DNA of 64,000 nucleotides from the sequence record MF360958.1. The stretch is one strand, 5' to 3'. The translations under genes and the position numbers were made by a program. Under the pieces are notes generated by a model. That model worked only from the letters and a program-made list of their open reading frames with translations. It ran no database searches and was not told the origin of the DNA. Of this stretch, positions 5,012 through 21,486 are shown piece by piece (position 1 is the stretch's first letter; each line of letters begins with the position of its first letter).

Positions 5012-5289
5012 CTGCTAGTAATGCTCAAAGCGAAAGGGATAGTTTAAAACACTCTCATACTAATATGATCGTGGAAGAAAAATGGTAACATAAAGCAACG
5101 ACCATGTTTAGGGTATCACCCCGCCGACCAGAGCGTATCTGGCAGGCTTTATGGTGACATTGGACTGAAGTGATCAGAATGTGTGATGAAGATTCAAATT
5201 TGAACGAGTAGCGTGGTAGAGCTTGCGCGACACCCTAAACATGGTCTTTTACGCGCAGGTTGATGGTTCGAGTCCATCCTAGCAGGCCA
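5012..5289 (+). ncRNA. 278-nt tRNA-scaffolded ncRNA with ~190-nt D-loop insertion and 22-nt anticodon-position loop
   Basis: Acceptor CTGCTAG(5012-5018)/CTAGCAG(5279-5285)+G+CCA; T-arm GATGG-TTCGAGT-CCATC; D-stem GCTC(5023-5026)/GAGC(5219-5222); stem GCGCG/CGCGC; variable loop AGGTT. Confidence 0.8.
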
Positions 5290-6123: not shown

Positions 6124-6160
6124 TTGACAATTGAGCATTTTTTCAGTAACATTATAAATA
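6124..6160 (+). promoter_or_regulatory. tandem sigma70 and T4-late-like promoter of the leader/tRNA operon
   Basis: TTGACA(6124-6129)-N17-TAACAT(6147-6152), followed by TATAAATA(6153-6160). Confidence 0.75.
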
Positions 6161-6196
6161 AGATAAACAAACGAATTAAACATTAAGGTAATTATT

Positions 6197-6283
6197 ATGC
6201 GTACTAACACAACAGTTAATCAGTATCAACTACAACAACTACCACTGGTTCTCTATCCCTATAATGGAGGGAAGGGCTGTTGA
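6197..6283 (+). CDS. attenuator leader peptide MRTNTTVNQYQLQQLPLVLYPYNGGKGC (28 aa; below the ORF-track cutoff)
   Basis: AAGGT RBS 7 nt upstream of ATG; control codons CAG TAT CAA CTA CAA CAA CTA CCA CTG GTT CTC TAT CCC TAT; the 3' end encodes attenuator segments 1 and 2. Confidence 0.85.
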   Translation: MRTNTTVNQYQLQQLPLVLYPYNGGKGC

Positions 6284-6345
6284 CGTGCGTGTAATATAAA
6301 CATGCAACGAATTCAAAAAGCCCTTCCAATTGGAAGGGCTTTTTT
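6251..6345 (+). promoter_or_regulatory. transcription attenuator: protector 1:2, antiterminator 2:3, terminator 3:4
   Basis: 1:2 CTCT-a-TCCCT(6251-6260)/AGGGAAGGG(6268-6276); 2:3 GGAAGGGCT(6270-6278)/AGCCCTTCC(6319-6327); 3:4 AAAAAGCCCTTCCA/TGGAAGGGCTTTTT plus U-run. Confidence 0.85.
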
Positions 6346-6365: not shown

Positions 6366-6450
6366 GGGGATGTGGTGGAATTGGGATACACGGTTGCCTT
6401 AGAAGTAACTGCCTTCGGGCTTGGGAGTTCGAGTCTCCCCATCCCCACCA
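6366..6450 (+). tRNA. tRNA-Leu(TAG)
   Basis: GGGGATG/CATCCCC acceptor, GTTGC-CTTAGAA-GTAAC anticodon arm, long variable arm, encoded CCA. Confidence 0.95.
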
Positions 6451-6490
6451 AAACAATTGAGAAAGAAAGAAGTATAGAGAAATAAAGAAA

Positions 6491-7018
6491 ATGATAAAAG
6501 AAGAAGAAATTTGGAAAGATGTTGATGATTATCCAGAATATTTTATGATCAGTTCTTTTGGTAGAGTATGGTCGAAAAGAACTAATAAAATATTAAAGCA
6601 AACAATTGGAAAAACAGGTTATCCAGTAATATCTTCTAAAATAGGTGGTAGAAAAGGTAAATCAATTTGTAAAAAAGTTCATCGTTGGGTTGCTAATGCA
6701 TTTATAGATAATTTAAACAATAGATCCTGTGTTAATCATATCGATGGGAATAAAACGAATAATTATTGGAAAAATCTTGAATGGTGTACGTACAGTGAGA
6801 ACACAAAACATGCTTATAAGAACAATTTAATTGAAGCCAAATGTGGCGAAGAACATTCTTCATCAGTTTTAAGTTTAGATTTTATTAAACAGATAGAAAA
6901 TGAATACGTGCCATATTCTAAAACAAATGGATTAAGAGCTTTAGCAAGAAAATATAATGTAAAACATAATACATTATCAAATGCCTTAAACAATGTGAGT
7001 AAATATTACGGGAAGTAG
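6491..7018 (+). CDS. NUMOD4-HNH free-standing homing endonuclease inside the tRNA operon
   Basis: EIWKDV..Y.ISSFGRV NUMOD4; VHRWVA.AFI..VNHIDGNKTNN..NLEW HNH; last codons overlap tRNA-Pro. Confidence 0.92.
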   Translation: MIKEEEIWKDVDDYPEYFMISSFGRVWSKRTNKILKQTIGKTGYPVISSKIGGRKGKSICKKVHRWVANAFIDNLNNRSCVNHIDGNKTNNYWKNLEWCTYSENTKHAYKNNLIEAKCGEEHSSSVLSLDFIKQIENEYVPYSKTNGLRALARKYNVKHNTLSNALNNVSKYYGK

Positions 7019-7084
7019 CTCAAGTGGGAGAGCACGCGGTTTGGGACCGCGAGGTTGGGGGATCGTGACCCTCCTTCCCGACCA
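7009..7084 (+). tRNA. tRNA-Pro(TGG)
   Basis: CGGGAAG/CTTCCCG acceptor, CGCGG-TTTGGGA-CCGCG, CCA; atypical T-loop ATCGTGA. Confidence 0.92.
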
Positions 7085-7098
7085 GACATGTAAGTAGT

Positions 7099-7176
7099 AG
7101 CTGACTGAAGGGAATTGGTATACCTTTCTGATCGAGAGTCAGAAGCGTCCCGGTTCAAGTCCGGGGTCAGCTACCA
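7099..7176 (+). tRNA. atypical tRNA with anticodon GAG (Leu decoding), C33 and short variable loop
   Basis: AGCTGAC/GTCAGCT acceptor +A+CCA; AAGG/CCTT D-stem; TCTGA-TCGAGAG-TCAGA; CCCGG-TTCAAGT-CCGGG. Confidence 0.75.
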
Positions 7177-7190
7177 ACATTTAGGAAAAT

Positions 7191-7276
7191 GGAGCGGCTG
7201 GGCACACTAGGGGAGCCCATCGGACTGTAAATTCGACGCGAAAGCTGTATAGGTTCGACTCCTATCCGCTCCACCA
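7191..7276 (+). tRNA. tRNA-Tyr(GTA)
   Basis: GGAGCGG/CCGCTCC acceptor, TCGGA-CTGTAAA-TTCGA, variable arm, CCA. Confidence 0.93.
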
Positions 7277-7317
7277 TTTTTTAATAGCATTATTGTTAAT
7301 AATGCTATTGCAGAGTT

Positions 7318-7472
7318 TAGGATGTAGCTGACATTGGTATAGGCGCATGGGTGGTTGACCATGTTGAGGATTACGCAACGGTAACAGGTTAGTGGCAATA
7401 TACTAGTTAAGTTGGCATTGATACTACCAATACGCGCCTCACTTGTGGGTTCGATTCCCACCATCCTAACCA
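7318..7472 (+). ncRNA. 155-nt tRNA-like RNA with 8-nt anticodon loop and ~80-nt variable region
   Basis: TAGGATG/CATCCTA+A+CCA; T-arm GTGGG-TTCGATT-CCCAC; CATGG-GTGGTTGA-CCATG; TGAGG(7365-7369)/CCTCA(7437-7441) closes the insertion. Confidence 0.75.
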
Positions 7473-7537
7473 AACATTATAGAGGTAAAATATGAAATAC
7501 CATATGGAAGAATGGGAAACAGGTTCTAAAGAATAAT

Positions 7538-7617: not shown

Positions 7618-7645
7618 AAAGCCCTCTCAATTGAGAGGGCTTTTT
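7618..7645 (+). terminator. intrinsic terminator ending the tRNA operon
   Basis: AAAGCCCTCTCAATTGAGAGGGCTTTTT perfect palindrome plus U-run. Confidence 0.9.
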
Positions 7646-8652: not shown

Positions 8653-8689
8653 GGATATGTGACATACTATATATCCTTAGTCATGGGGT

Positions 8690-8816
8690 ATCTACTAAAG
8701 CTTTGTGCAGTGGATCAAGTGGGCTTGAGGACAGACATTGTGTCTGTCAAACGGTTCGATTCCGGGGCGCTGTAATCAATTGTGTAGTTAAGAGACAAGG
8801 CAAAGCTTTAGTAGAT
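8690..8816 (+). ncRNA. structured ncRNA: cloverleaf-like domain with T-loop on a 16-bp terminal stem
   Basis: ATCTACTAAAGCTTTG/CAAAGCTTTAGTAGAT perfect IR; inner stems TGCAGTG/CGCTGTA, TCAAG/CTTGA, GACAGACA/TGTCTGTC, CGG-TTCGATT-CCG; TTGACA promoter at 8639. Confidence 0.65.
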
Positions 8817-8831
8817 TATTTTTAAACAATG

Positions 8832-8973
8832 GGCTGTAGCTGCGGAATCTTTAATTGATAGCGTGATGTGAGTTAAAGATTATGGCCAAAGCGAGACTGT
8901 CAGTATTATTTCCTAATCACGCCTCTAGGTTTAATACTGACGGTTGAGGGGTTCGAATCCTCTACAGCCGCCA
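8832..8973 (+). ncRNA. 142-nt tRNA-like RNA with two long hairpins whose loops are complementary
   Basis: GGCTGTAG/CTACAGCC+G+CCA; TTCGAAT T-loop; AATCTTTAA/TTAAAGATT and CTGTCAGTATTA/TAATACTGACGG hairpins; loop GCGTGAT(8861-8867) complementary to ATCACGC(8916-8922). Confidence 0.75.
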
Positions 8974-9016
8974 AATTTTAAATAACGCTGATAAACTCTT
9001 ATTAAAAGGTATATGT

Positions 9017-10108
9017 ATGTCACAACTTAAAACATCGTTTTCTGATCTTGATACTATTGTTAAAGTTATTCAATATGATGAAGATAGTGTTACTGACTAT
9101 CTGAAACCAGCGGTATATTCAGTAGATTACAACTTGCTAGATGGATTTTTCCTTAATAAGCATAGTTCTCATTTTGAACAACCAGATAAAGTGTACGGGA
9201 AAATTCATCGTCGCGTTGGAAAAATTATTCATTCATATAGCAACAGCGAAAGTTCTTTTGGTGTTTTACTGAGTGGGTCAAAAGGTTCAGGAAAAACAAT
9301 GACCTCTTGTATTACAGCCAATCGCTGTATTCATGAACTAGGTCTTCCTATTATTTTGGTACAAAATGAATTTAATGCTTTTGAACTTTCTTCTTTTATT
9401 CAAAAGCTTGGCGAAGTCGTTGTATTTTTTGATGAATTTGGCAAAAACTTTAAAAATGAAGATGGAAATCAAAATGGTCTTTTAACACTATTTGATGGTA
9501 CTGGTTCCGATAAGCGTCTAGTTATTCTCACGGAAAATAATGTTTGGGATATTAATAACTTCATGCTAGAACGGCCCGGAAGAATTCACTATCATTTTCG
9601 TCATGATAAACTTGATGAAGAAATGGTTCGAGAATATTGTTCTGATTATGATATTCCTGAAAATAAAATTGAACAAATTTGTCTTCTTCGTGAATCATCA
9701 ATGGATTTTTCTTTTGATACACTGCAAGCGGTCGTTACTGAATACTTAAAATATCCTGATGATATCTTTTCACTTGTAGAAGATTTGAATATCGAACAAC
9801 CTATTTCTATGTCTCAAAAAATGTTGGAAATTACAGAAATTACTGATCAGCAAGGAAATTCAAGAACACTATGGAATAAACGTCATAAAACAAACAATGT
9901 TGTTTTTCCAGAAGGATTTTCTGAGACAGAACTTTTTGTCAATGATGTTGATGAACAAGATTGGAGAATTGTCTTATTAGATTGCGGATCTATCGTAAAA
10001 CGAGAAGGTAATAACTACGTATTCCATACATCATTTGATAATGATCAAACAGAACATTTAGTTATTAAAGGTAGATACTATCAAGATAATTTTAAAAAAT
10101 CGTTTTAA
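9017..10108 (+). CDS. AAA+ family ATPase
   Basis: Walker A GSKGSGKT, Walker B VVVFFDE, ERPGR arginine finger. Confidence 0.88.
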   Translation: MSQLKTSFSDLDTIVKVIQYDEDSVTDYLKPAVYSVDYNLLDGFFLNKHSSHFEQPDKVYGKIHRRVGKIIHSYSNSESSFGVLLSGSKGSGKTMTSCITANRCIHELGLPIILVQNEFNAFELSSFIQKLGEVVVFFDEFGKNFKNEDGNQNGLLTLFDGTGSDKRLVILTENNVWDINNFMLERPGRIHYHFRHDKLDEEMVREYCSDYDIPENKIEQICLLRESSMDFSFDTLQAVVTEYLKYPDDIFSLVEDLNIEQPISMSQKMLEITEITDQQGNSRTLWNKRHKTNNVVFPEGFSETELFVNDVDEQDWRIVLLDCGSIVKREGNNYVFHTSFDNDQTEHLVIKGRYYQDNFKKSF

Positions 10109-10117
10109 TCATGCAAA

Positions 10118-10248
10118 GTTCGGGTAGCTTAAAAGGGTGCAATCGGTTTAGATGAGATCCATGGTATCATTTATTCTTGATTACATCGACAAAGCGGACA
10201 GGACATAGGCCCCCTGTCATGGTGGTTCGAATCCATCCCCGAGCACCA
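10118..10248 (+). ncRNA. 131-nt tRNA-like RNA lacking a canonical anticodon loop
   Basis: GTTCGGG/CCCGAGC+A+CCA; GGTGG-TTCGAAT-CCATC; hairpin GACAGG/CCTGTC before the T-arm. Confidence 0.7.
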
Positions 10249-19915: not shown

Positions 19916-20069
19916 TACCAAACAGCCAGATACCCTAAGATGTGATCCATCTAGCCCGAAACTGGTGATGTGTCCTATAAAAAGTATGCTTAATAGGGTT
20001 GAAATGGACACTAATTCAACTACAGGACTCGCAGGGTGGGTGGATATTCAACAACCCTGCACATTTTTT
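19916..20069 (+). ncRNA. structured intergenic RNA ending in a terminator-like hairpin
   Basis: CCAG/CTGG, AGATG/CATCT, GTGTCC/GGACAC, GTTGAA/TTCAAC, ACCCTA/TAGGGT; GCAGGGT/ACCCTGC followed by ACATTTTTT. Confidence 0.5.
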
Positions 20070-20097
20070 AAACTTTCTTAAACAATTTGAGAAAATT

Positions 20098-20736
20098 ATG
20101 TCTAAAAACTTTATTTCCATTTTTAATGCTAATTTTCCTGATGCTGAATATAATAGTTTATTTGTGTTTGGATCACGGGTTTATGGAAACACAACTGGAC
20201 TTTCAGACATTGATTACATCGTGATTAGTGATAATATGTCTTCAGCAAATATTCATGATTATATCAATGTTTCCTGTTATACGAATGAACAATTTAATAA
20301 ACTTATTCAGGATCATGAAATTACAGCTTTGGAAGTTTTATCACTATCTTTAAATAATGACTGCGAGAACTATTACGATGGCGATGTTCCTGAATTTTAC
20401 ATTGATCTATCAACATTGCGTTCTTCCATATCATCAAAAGCAAGCAATTCATTTGTAAAAGCTAAGAAAAAATTAACAGTAGATAAAGACTATGATTTTT
20501 ATTGCTCAATGAAATCACTTTTTCATGCAATTCGAATTTATGACTTTGGTAAGCAACTTGCCGAATACGGTTATATTCACAATTTTGAAAGTTGCAATGA
20601 TATTTTCTATAATATTCAACGAGATTATAATAGTTGTATTAATACCGAACAAATTTTAAAAGTAATTGACAATGTATATAAACCTACGTATAATCAATAC
20701 GCATCAGAATTCAGAAAAGTATGTCCAAAAGAATAA
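20098..20736 (+). CDS. Pol-beta-superfamily nucleotidyltransferase
   Basis: Start moved to ATG 20098; FGSRVYG...SDIDY motif; C-terminal KSLFHAIRI. Confidence 0.8.
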   Translation: MSKNFISIFNANFPDAEYNSLFVFGSRVYGNTTGLSDIDYIVISDNMSSANIHDYINVSCYTNEQFNKLIQDHEITALEVLSLSLNNDCENYYDGDVPEFYIDLSTLRSSISSKASNSFVKAKKKLTVDKDYDFYCSMKSLFHAIRIYDFGKQLAEYGYIHNFESCNDIFYNIQRDYNSCINTEQILKVIDNVYKPTYNQYASEFRKVCPKE

Positions 20737-21390: not shown

Positions 21391-21403
21391 ATATAAACTT
21401 ATT

Positions 21404-21486
21404 CTCCCGTGCCCCAACACTGGCCTTCTAAGCCAGTCCTTAACGTTGGAAGGAGGTATGAGGTTCGATTCCTCCACGGGAGGCCA
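21404..21486 (+). tRNA. D-armless tRNA-Arg(TCT)-like RNA with 8/4 acceptor/T fold
   Basis: CTCCCGTG/CACGGGAG+G+CCA; GAGG-TTCGATT-CCTC; CTGGC-CTTCTAA-GCCAG; variable hairpin TCCTT/AAGGA; only ~8 nt where the D-arm should be. Confidence 0.75.

What the first reader, a model, noticed from the sequence alone, without database searches (positions are those of the whole stretch)
7318..7472. 155-nt tRNA-like member of the attenuated operon with an 8-nt loop and ~80-nt variable domain
SEEN: normal acceptor, Leu-like D region and T-arm; anticodon stem CATGG/CCATG with loop GTGGTTGA, which contains GGT (Thr) and GTT (Asn) triplets. The insertion is closed by TGAGG/CCTCA and contains TACCAAT and GCGCCT, complementary to D-region ATTGGTA and AGGCGC, allowing an alternative fold. 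The leader codons not matched by canonical tRNAs are mostly Thr and Asn (ACT AAC ACA ACA GTT AAT). INFERENCE (weak): it may be a functional or processed Thr/Asn decoder, or a mimic co-induced with the tRNAs.
Basis: partly seen in the sequence, partly recalled or inferred. Interest (0 to 1): 0.65.

Follow-up and report, generated by a model that had tools for sequence, protein, structure and literature searches.

The report
Giant-armed tRNA-like gene in phage
A 440-kb salt-lake phage carries, inside one of its tRNA operons, a 155-base gene that keeps every arm of a leucine-type tRNA but has an 8-base anticodon loop and an 81-base side arm; it is real and kept in related phages, but it is probably a tRNA look-alike rather than a normal decoder, and its job is untested.

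Summary
The window is Salicola phage SCTP-2 (MF360958.1, 310001-374000). Bases 7318-7472 fold into a complete cloverleaf with no mismatch in any stem (one G-U in the D stem). It has an encoded A-CCA end, a Leu-type D arm, an 8-nt anticodon loop and an 81-nt variable region that forms one long irregular hairpin.

Its closest paralogue is the operon's own tRNA-Leu(UAG). Default ARAGORN and Rfam's tRNA model both miss it. The intron model from ARAGORN -i, Gly(ACC), needs mismatched stems and a shifted D arm, so I reject it.

Contigs from three metagenome runs carry the whole element at about 89-96% identity and near-constant length. In one run the similarity stops at the gene's edges. I could not retrieve which bases differ, so there is no covariation test.

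The D-region/insert complementarity is within chance (P about 0.07) and the two pairings cross.

My best reading, at about 0.4, is a matured, stable, tRNA-Leu-derived mimic comparable to T4 RNAC/RNAD. A Thr/Asn or four-base decoder, a spliced pre-tRNA and a decaying gene all remain possible. The scan had already noted sibling long tRNA-like genes in this phage.

The parts
7318..7472 (+). Whole 155-nt tRNA-like gene
   Evidence: Kept at full length in relatives from three sequencing runs.
7318..7324 (+). Acceptor stem, 5' strand (UAGGAUG); U at -1
   Evidence: Seven Watson-Crick pairs with 7462-7468.
7327..7344 (+). D arm: 3-bp stem (GCU/GGC) and 12-nt Leu-type loop with A14, G18, G19
   Evidence: The same D loop and register occur in an ordinary class II tRNA of an IMG/VR phage (L003:2109-2191).
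7346..7363 (+). Anticodon-position arm: 5-bp perfect stem and 8-nt loop GUGGUUGA (7351-7358)
   Evidence: ARAGORN reads it as a 4-base anticodon 'ggtt' in 374 trial versions with a shortened variable region.
7364..7444 (+). 81-nt variable region: one long irregular hairpin with helices 7365-69/7437-41, 7374-76/7434-36, 7380-83/7425-28, 7388-94/7416-22 and 7396-99/7411-14
   Evidence: No second copy in the 440-kb genome. No Rfam family matches it.
7445..7461 (+). T arm (GUGGG, loop UUCGAUU, CCCAC)
7462..7472 (+). Acceptor stem 3' strand, discriminator A7469, encoded CCA
7283..7309 (+). A+U-rich 11-bp spacer hairpin just upstream; possible processing signal
   Evidence: Read directly from the sequence. 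In run X2 the unaligned sequence at this place forms a different hairpin (loose end).
6124..6344 (+). Operon start: promoter-like site (6124-6152), 28-codon leader ORF (6198-6284), terminator-like hairpin (6315-6344)
   Evidence: Codons 9-22 of the leader are 13/14 Gln, Tyr, Leu or Pro, the tRNAs of this operon (read; tRNAs).
7618..7643 (+). Terminator-like hairpin that ends the operon after tRNA-Gln

Best explanation
The element is a tRNA-Leu-derived, tRNA-shaped stable RNA that does not serve as an ordinary decoder.

Proposed course of events:
1. It is transcribed with Leu(UAG), Pro, 'Leu(GAG)', Tyr and Gln whenever the leader attenuator is read through.
2. Its upper half is intact: a 7-bp acceptor stem stacked on a 5-bp T stem, with U at -1, A73 and an encoded CCA. 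This makes it a normal substrate for RNase P and 3' trimming.
3. A 155-nt RNA ending in CCA should therefore accumulate. It may be charged, most likely by LeuRS, which in E. coli reads A73 and the D/T-loop architecture rather than the anticodon.
4. The 8-nt loop lacks a normal 32/37 context, so it cannot read triplets efficiently.
5. The RNA would then act as a mimic. Its tRNA body engages a tRNA-binding factor, such as a host tRNA-cleaving or tRNA-modifying defence enzyme or a synthetase. The 81-nt arm sticks out from the core as an extra binding platform.

Shown here: the fold, the operon context, the descent from a Leu-type tRNA, and retention in relatives.
Inferred: processing, stability, charging, and the decoy role together with its target.
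For: - Every cloverleaf stem is intact, the universal tertiary nucleotides are present (U8, A14, G18G19, G53, U54U55C56, A58, C61), and CCA is encoded.
- The cloverleaf is within 0.2 kcal/mol of the minimum free energy.
- The gene lies inside a promoter-to-terminator unit with five tRNAs.
- The nearest paralogue is the operon's tRNA-Leu(UAG).
- The D-arm register is confirmed by an ordinary class II tRNA with the same D loop.
- Contigs from three independent runs keep the whole element: X1 has 9 differences and 0 gaps over 7271-7512; X2 has 17 differences and 2 gaps over 7301-7474; X3 covers 7033-7447.
- In X2 the similarity of at least 80% begins 17 nt before the gene and ends 2 nt after it, and no DNA form skips the insert.
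- The same phage holds at least four more over-long tRNA-like genes with acceptor, T arm and CCA, so this is a class, not an accident.
- T4 provides a precedent. RNAC (139 nt) and RNAD (119 nt) lie in its tRNA cluster beside a homing endonuclease, RNAC has a tRNA T arm, they are expressed, and their function is unknown (PMC3014915, PMC9697503).
- The anticodon loop departs from every decoding rule: 8 nt, G32, and no purine at 37 next to GGU (U37); beside GUU position 37 is G, a purine but not the A that ANN-reading tRNAs carry.
Against: - There is no expression, end-mapping or charging data. No RNA run holds the sequence.
- I could not see where the relatives differ, so there is no covariation test and no proof of selection on the insert.
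- No partner protein was identified.
- The higher-depth population in run X1 has no copy of 7199-7450 at 80% identity or better (depth 22 against about 105-123 on the flanks; loose end at 7451). The element is therefore dispensable for at least some relatives.
- A tRNA carrying a roughly 100-nt aptamer in its variable loop still works on E. coli ribosomes (PMC5397188), so the long arm alone does not rule out decoding.
Confidence: 0.4

Rival explanations
1. It is a working decoder. As a class II tRNA with an enlarged loop, it reads ACY through GGU, AAY through GUU, or a four-base word (AACC or ACCN) that causes +1 frameshifting.
For: - The anticodon stem is perfect and U33 sits in place before GGU.
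- ARAGORN calls the loop a 'ggtt' anticodon once the arm is shortened.
- The leader has ACU, AAC and AAU codons that no canonical tRNA of the operon reads.
- Natural and mutant tRNAs with 8-nt loops do decode: yeast mitochondrial tRNA-Thr1 (PMC3113583) and SufJ, a GGU-type Thr tRNA that reads ACCN (PMC4238358).
- A large variable-loop insert is tolerated by ribosomes (PMC5397188).
Against: - By textbook E. coli rules the identity marks fit Leu or Tyr (class II, A73, U1-A72), not Thr or Asn. Decoding would put the wrong amino acid at Thr or Asn codons.
- G32, and U or G at position 37, are atypical for readers of ANN codons.
- The phage already has Thr(UGU) and an Asn(GUU) gene.
- The match between loop triplets and leftover leader codons was found after the fact. 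About a fifth of all codons are 'leftover', so the match is weak.
Confidence: 0.2
2. It is a relic: a duplicate tRNA-Leu gene disabled by a 1-nt gain in the anticodon loop and an insertion of about 65-70 nt in the variable arm. It is still transcribed and trimmed but serves no purpose.
For: - Both departures are the kind that kill a decoder.
- Rfam's tRNA model finds only the T arm.
- The main population in run X1 lacks a recognisable copy of 7199-7450.
- Divergence in X2 (about 11%) is no lower than over the neighbouring tRNA-Gln stretch (about 14%).
- The whole-molecule fold energy is not unusual (z = -0.68).
Against: - None of the 25 pairs in the cloverleaf stems and arm base is a mismatch (one is a G-U wobble in the D stem), and CCA is kept.
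- Length is conserved in three runs, and in X2 the similarity ends at the gene's edges.
- The insert folds into one well-defined hairpin: minimum-energy and centroid structures coincide, z = -1.85.
- Several other elaborate tRNA-like genes are maintained in the same genome.
Confidence: 0.2
3. It is a pre-tRNA whose extra bases are cut out and the halves rejoined, as proposed for the 45-nt insert in this phage's tRNA-Asn and the 'enigmatic introns' of Lak megaphage tRNAs.
For: - ARAGORN -i calls it tRNA-Gly(ACC) with a 74-nt intron at 32/33, and calls two other interrupted tRNAs in the phage.
- The phage encodes an Rnl1-type RNA ligase and two other RNA ligases of family PF09414.
- Introns in phage tRNAs have been reported (PMC6784885).
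Against: - The intron model needs an anticodon stem with an A-C mismatch and a G-U, and a D stem with a G-G. It also shifts the D arm away from the register seen in the L003 tRNA.
- It is 5 kcal/mol worse than the cloverleaf (-40.5 against -45.7).
- A scan of 1380 single deletions gave no clean canonical tRNA. Most outcomes kept the 8-nt loop.
- The insert sits in the variable arm, where it does not block folding.
- There is no bulge-helix-bulge motif, no splicing endonuclease, no RtcB, and no group I or ribozyme match.
Confidence: 0.1

Closest known systems
Phage T4 RNAC (species 1, 139 nt) and RNAD (species 2, 119 nt)
   Same: Over-long stable RNAs encoded inside a phage tRNA cluster that also holds a homing endonuclease. 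RNAC carries a tRNA T arm near its 3' end. Their function is unknown (PMC3014915, PMC9697503).
   Different: No sequence similarity beyond the T loop. RNAC has lost a recognisable D arm and anticodon arm and has a weak acceptor stem. The SCTP-2 element keeps the complete cloverleaf and an encoded CCA.
Bacterial class II tRNA-Leu
   Same: A 3-bp D stem, a D loop containing AUUGGUA, A73, and a variable arm emerging between the anticodon and T arms. The nearest paralogue is SCTP-2 tRNA-Leu(UAG).
   Different: The variable region is 81 nt, against about 10-24 nt in known class II tRNAs (my knowledge). The loop has 8 nt and no Leu anticodon. The first pair is U1-A72.
tRNAs with 8-nt anticodon loops: +1 frameshift suppressors (SufJ, SufB2) and yeast mitochondrial tRNA-Thr1
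   Same: One extra base in the anticodon loop on an otherwise normal anticodon stem. SufJ also carries GGU (PMC4238358, PMC3113583).
   Different: In those tRNAs the body matches the amino acid they insert, and the variable loop is normal. Here the body is Leu-like and nothing shows decoding.
'Enigmatic' introns in Lak megaphage tRNAs, and the interrupted tRNA-Asn of SCTP-2
   Same: Extra tens of bases inside tRNA genes of very large phages, with no known removal mechanism (PMC6784885).
   Different: Those inserts lie in the anticodon loop, and removing them restores a canonical tRNA. Here the insert lies in the variable arm and the loop is still abnormal without it.
Engineered V-Spinach tRNA
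   Same: A large structured RNA grafted into the variable loop of a tRNA that still folds, is charged and enters the ribosome (PMC5397188).
   Different: Man-made. Its anticodon loop is normal.
tmRNA and bacterial YrlA (Y RNA-like) tRNA mimics
   Same: They use a tRNA-like upper half to recruit tRNA enzymes.
   Different: ARAGORN finds no tmRNA, there is no G3-U70 pair, and the phage has no Ro/TROVE gene. Unlike those RNAs, the element keeps its D and anticodon arms.

Membership tests
Canonical elongator tRNA (Rfam RF00005) | Four-arm cloverleaf with 7-bp acceptor stem, 5-bp T stem and the conserved tertiary nucleotides | tested here: met
   all stems pair. U8, A14, G18G19, G53, U54U55C56, A58 and C61 are present.
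Canonical elongator tRNA (Rfam RF00005) | 7-nt anticodon loop with pyrimidine 32, U33 and purine 37 | tested here: not met
   The loop is 8 nt, GUGGUUGA. ARAGORN reads a 4-base anticodon.
Canonical elongator tRNA (Rfam RF00005) | Reaches the family's covariance-model score | tested here: not met
   At E up to 10, only local T-arm matches were found in 7280-7500. There was no hit in the 17.5-kb scan or the whole-genome scan.
Class II tRNA-Leu | Long variable arm, 3-bp D stem with Leu-type D loop, A73 | tested here: met
   The arm is about four times longer than any I know of.
Class II tRNA-Leu | Leu anticodon (NAG or NAA) and charging by LeuRS | tested here: not met
   No NAG or NAA triplet sits in anticodon position. 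Charging cannot be tested with these tools.
Intron-containing tRNA (protein-spliced or group I) | Removing one stretch yields a canonical tRNA | tested here: not met
   The best model (ARAGORN -i, Gly-ACC) has mismatched D and anticodon stems and scores -40.5 against -45.7 kcal/mol. A scan of 1380 deletions gave no clean solution.
Intron-containing tRNA (protein-spliced or group I) | Splicing machinery or a self-splicing fold | tested here: not met
   No tRNA splicing endonuclease and no RtcB. No Rfam intron or ribozyme match. RNA ligases are present, but they are common in jumbo phages (PMC7824862).
tmRNA | tRNA-Ala-like end with G3-U70, a tag reading frame, detection by ARAGORN or Rfam | tested here: not met
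   The pair is G3-C70. ARAGORN -m finds none. Rfam tmRNA matches only the 17-nt T arm.
T4 RNAC/RNAD-type stable RNA of phage tRNA clusters | Encoded within and co-oriented with a phage tRNA cluster; longer than a tRNA; has a tRNA-like 3' part | tested here: met
T4 RNAC/RNAD-type stable RNA of phage tRNA clusters | Sequence or structural homology to RNAC or RNAD; stable accumulation in infected cells | tested here: not met
   No similarity beyond the T loop. Accumulation cannot be tested here. This is an analogy, not membership.
+1 frameshift-suppressor-type tRNA | 8-nt anticodon loop on a normal anticodon stem | tested here: met
+1 frameshift-suppressor-type tRNA | Reads a four-base codon on the ribosome | not testable with these tools
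   Needs a reporter assay.

The most novel reading that the evidence does not exclude
The element is a natural, phage-made adaptor with two overlapping anticodons in one 8-nt loop (GGU and GUU, or the four-base GGUU). It is charged through a Leu-type body and tethered or regulated through its 81-nt arm. The phage would switch it on through the codon-sensing leader to recode or frameshift at ACY, AAY or AACC sites.
Probability: 0.06. Interest if true: 0.9.

Novelty: new variant of a known kind. Interest (0 to 1): 0.55.

Why it matters
Phage tRNA clusters have been known for 50 years to hold extra stable RNAs of unknown function (T4 RNAC and RNAD). Huge phages also carry unexplained interrupted tRNAs. 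This element sits between a true tRNA and those remodelled RNAs: the full cloverleaf is retained, with an altered decoding loop and, as far as I know, the longest variable arm seen in a natural tRNA-shaped gene.

It lies in an operon that appears to be switched on when its own tRNAs run short. That placement gives a concrete way to ask whether such RNAs act as decoys against tRNA-targeting bacterial defences, as unusual decoders, or as scaffolds. If the RNA is stable and charged, it would also be a natural precedent for tRNA-aptamer fusions.

Tried and rejected
1. Retrieving homologues for a covariation test.
- Exact and degenerate patterns found only one unrelated class II tRNA with the same D loop (L003). 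I scanned IMG/VR, JGI metagenomes and GTDB genomes. The three hits were chance matches.
- blastn of the phage collection found only T-arm matches.
- Protein routes also failed. A spurious antisense ORF had no hit. The neighbouring 82-aa ORF matched only itself. AAA ATPase homologues are at most 53% identical, and their contigs hold no homologue of the element.

2. The ARAGORN intron model, Gly(ACC). Rejected: it needs mismatched stems, a shifted D arm and a worse energy.

3. A mobile mini-element as the source of the insert. Rejected: there is no second copy in the genome.

4. The D-region/insert alternative fold. It is not beyond chance, and the two pairings cross.

5. tmRNA, a Ro/Y-RNA partner, or a ribozyme. 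No support. The PF11443 search rang in no control genome, so it carries no information.

6. Motifs shared with the sibling long tRNA-like genes. There is one 9-mer shared with 5012-5289, with about 0.08 expected by chance (my own estimate from the two sequence lengths), so not convincing.

7. Pairing of the insert with the leader RNA. A global duplex calculation gave p = 0.018, but for an unrealistic 90-nt duplex, so I discard it.

Full report
**Identity of the DNA.** The window is bases 310001-374000 of Salicola phage SCTP-2 (MF360958.1), a 440-kb jumbo phage from an Italian solar saltern. The deposited record annotates no RNA genes in the stretches I looked at. An Rfam scan of the whole record finds 27 tRNA matches at E ≤ 1, 23 of them above the gathering score, between about 296 and 331 kb and near 404 kb.

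**The observation.** I read 7318-7472 directly and laid out the helices by script.
- Acceptor stem: 7318-7324 with 7462-7468, 7 Watson-Crick pairs, with U at -1, discriminator A and an encoded CCA.
- U8 and A9 follow the acceptor strand.
- D arm: a 3-bp stem (7327-29/7342-44) and a 12-nt loop with A14 and G18G19.
- Position 26 is G.
- Anticodon arm: a perfect 5-bp stem (7346-50/7359-63) closing an 8-nt loop, GUGGUUGA.
- Variable region: 81 nt (7364-7444).
- T arm: standard, at 7445-7461.

With these helices enforced the molecule folds at -45.7 kcal/mol, against -45.9 for the unconstrained optimum. The variable region alone forms one long, irregular hairpin of five helices. Its energy is -20.2 kcal/mol, the minimum-energy and centroid structures coincide, z = -1.85, and 11 of 200 shuffles fold as well.

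Default ARAGORN misses the gene. Rfam's tRNA model matches only the T arm.

**The alternative fold.** The two motifs complementary to the D region exist (7425-31 and 7434-39). A 7-nt complement appears in 6.8% of dinucleotide shuffles of the insert, and the duplex energy is unremarkable (p = 0.16). The two pairings cross one another, so they cannot make one helix. I treat this part of the observation as unsupported.

That model has three problems:
- It shifts the D stem by one base and gives it a G-G pair.
- It gives the anticodon stem an A-C mismatch and a G-U pair.
- It is about 5 kcal/mol worse.

It also has U1-A72 and A73. I then deleted every stretch of 55-94 nt from the gene (1380 variants) and ran ARAGORN. 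Of 458 calls, 374 were 'tRNA-???(ggtt)', meaning the same cloverleaf with the 8-nt loop, and no deletion gave a clean canonical tRNA.

**Origin.** With the arm interior removed, the closest of the phage's tRNAs is tRNA-Leu(UAG) at 6366-6450, the first gene of the same operon. The best match in the T4 tRNA region is to T4 tRNA-Leu. The insert has no second copy in the genome and matches no Rfam family.

**Context.** A promoter-like site (6124-6152), a 28-codon leader ORF and a terminator-like hairpin (6315-6344) precede the operon. The gene order is Leu(UAG), an HNH/NUMOD4 homing endonuclease, Pro, an odd 'Leu(GAG)', Tyr, an A+U-rich hairpin, the element, a 14-codon mini-ORF and Gln. A second terminator closes the unit at 7618-7643. 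In the leader, 13 of codons 9-22 are Gln, Tyr, Leu or Pro.

**Relatives.** No RNA run holds the sequence. Contigs from three runs in three studies do carry diverged copies:
- X1 covers 7271-7512 with 9 differences and no gap.
- X2 covers 7301-7474 with 17 differences and 2 gaps.
- X3 covers 7033-7447 with 33 differences and 18 gaps.

No contig skips the insert. In X2 the alignable stretch starts 17 nt before the gene and ends 2 nt after it, so the gene is better kept than its spacers. The neighbours are mosaic: in X1 the HNH gene and Pro tRNA, and separately the Tyr tRNA, are replaced by other sequence. The higher-depth population in X1 has no copy of 7199-7450 at 80% identity or better, so some relatives do without the element. 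All other routes to homologues failed (see Tried and rejected).

**A class of such genes.** The same phage has several other unusual tRNA-like genes:
- A tRNA-Asn with a 45-nt insert in the anticodon loop (record 298729-298850).
- Over-long genes with acceptor stem, T arm and CCA at window 5012-5289, 8831-8975 and 10118-10248.
- An 8/9-bp-acceptor Arg(UCU)-like gene at 21403-21486.

Earlier notes of this scan describe these siblings. I reproduced their existence but not their follow-up claims.

**Enzymes.** The phage encodes an Rnl1-type RNA ligase and two PF09414 RNA ligases. It has no RtcB, no tRNA splicing endonuclease and no TROVE protein. Such ligases are usual in jumbo phages as tRNA repair enzymes (PMC7824862), so they do not argue specifically for splicing.

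**Interpretation.** The upper half of the molecule is everything RNase P, 3' trimming and CCA maintenance need, so a stable 155-nt RNA is the expected product (inference from established tRNA processing). The class II frame with A73 suggests Leu, or less likely Tyr. It lacks the ThrRS and AsnRS marks known from E. coli (my knowledge). The 8-nt loop, with G32 and no A37 beside GGU or GUU, argues against ordinary triplet reading.

The long arm alone does not exclude ribosome use, because a tRNA with a Spinach aptamer in its variable loop supports translation in E. coli (PMC5397188). Eight-base loops can also decode (PMC4238358, PMC3113583).

Weighing these points, my estimates are:
- Stable tRNA mimic of the T4 RNAC/RNAD kind (function unknown; PMC3014915, PMC9697503): about 0.4.
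- Unusual decoder: about 0.2.
- Decaying duplicate: about 0.2.
- Spliced precursor: about 0.1.

The decoy role and any target are inference only.

**Novelty.** Over-long RNAs in phage tRNA clusters and odd phage tRNAs are known (T4; PMC6784885; PMC5389517). I found no description of a complete cloverleaf combined with an 8-nt loop and an 81-nt variable arm. I rate it a new variant of a known kind.

Noticed in passing
window 7493-7537: A 14-codon mini-ORF (MKYHMEEWETGSKE) with a good ribosome-binding site lies between the element and tRNA-Gln. Its stop codon abuts the tRNA. The run X2 relative keeps the binding site and the MKY start although the flank is otherwise diverged (loose end).
   Followed up: partly
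window 7099-7176: The gene ARAGORN calls tRNA-Leu(GAG) is irregular. It has no base 26, C instead of U at position 33, and a class I length. Rfam's tRNA model does not find it. Its D loop and the string GTAGCTGAC are shared with the 155-nt element.
   Followed up: partly
window 6491-7018: An HNH/NUMOD4 homing endonuclease gene sits between tRNA genes. A relative in run X1 lacks it: 6452-7080 is replaced by 90 other bases. This parallels segB in the T4 tRNA cluster.
   Followed up: partly
window 6198-6344: In the leader ORF, codons 9-22 are 13/14 Gln, Tyr, Leu or Pro, the tRNAs of the operon. A strong terminator follows, and Rfam gives weak Thr- and Phe-leader-like matches. This is a candidate attenuator for tRNA genes, already noted by the scan.
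   Followed up: partly
window 21403-21486: A tRNA-like gene with an 8-9-bp acceptor stem, a short T stem, a loop with UCU (Arg) and an encoded CCA. It gives a weak tRNA-Sec match of 31.5 bits. It resembles the 8/4 or 9/3 'allo-tRNA' shapes described in PMC5389517.
   Followed up: no
window 8684-8815: An RNA-like element whose two ends form a helix of about 17 bp around an inner T-arm-like hairpin. The shape recalls YrlA, but the phage has no TROVE gene.
   Followed up: partly
window 8831-8975, 9017-10108, 10118-10248; L006:7804-9575; L005; L010; L013; L015: An AAA ATPase gene is flanked by long tRNA-like genes in SCTP-2. Its 45-53% identical homologues sit in Marinobacter or Vreelandella prophage-like contigs and metagenome phages. 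Those also lie next to gene-free gaps holding T-arm motifs or tRNAs, sometimes near ArfA-like or RF-1-domain genes.
   Followed up: partly
L003:1417-2262 (IMGVR_UViG_3300013121_000027): In an unrelated 231-kb phage, a tRNA gene appears split by about 800 bp. The intervening stretch holds a reverse-strand ORF that I did not scan (possibly a homing endonuclease) and a complete class II-shaped tRNA with a UUG (Gln) anticodon, U1-A72 and A73.
   Followed up: no
window 19999-20736: An ORF with a Pol-beta-type nucleotidyltransferase domain lies between tRNA-Cys and tRNA-Met. It may be the RNA-ligase-associated RlaP type described for jumbo phages (PMC7824862).
   Followed up: no
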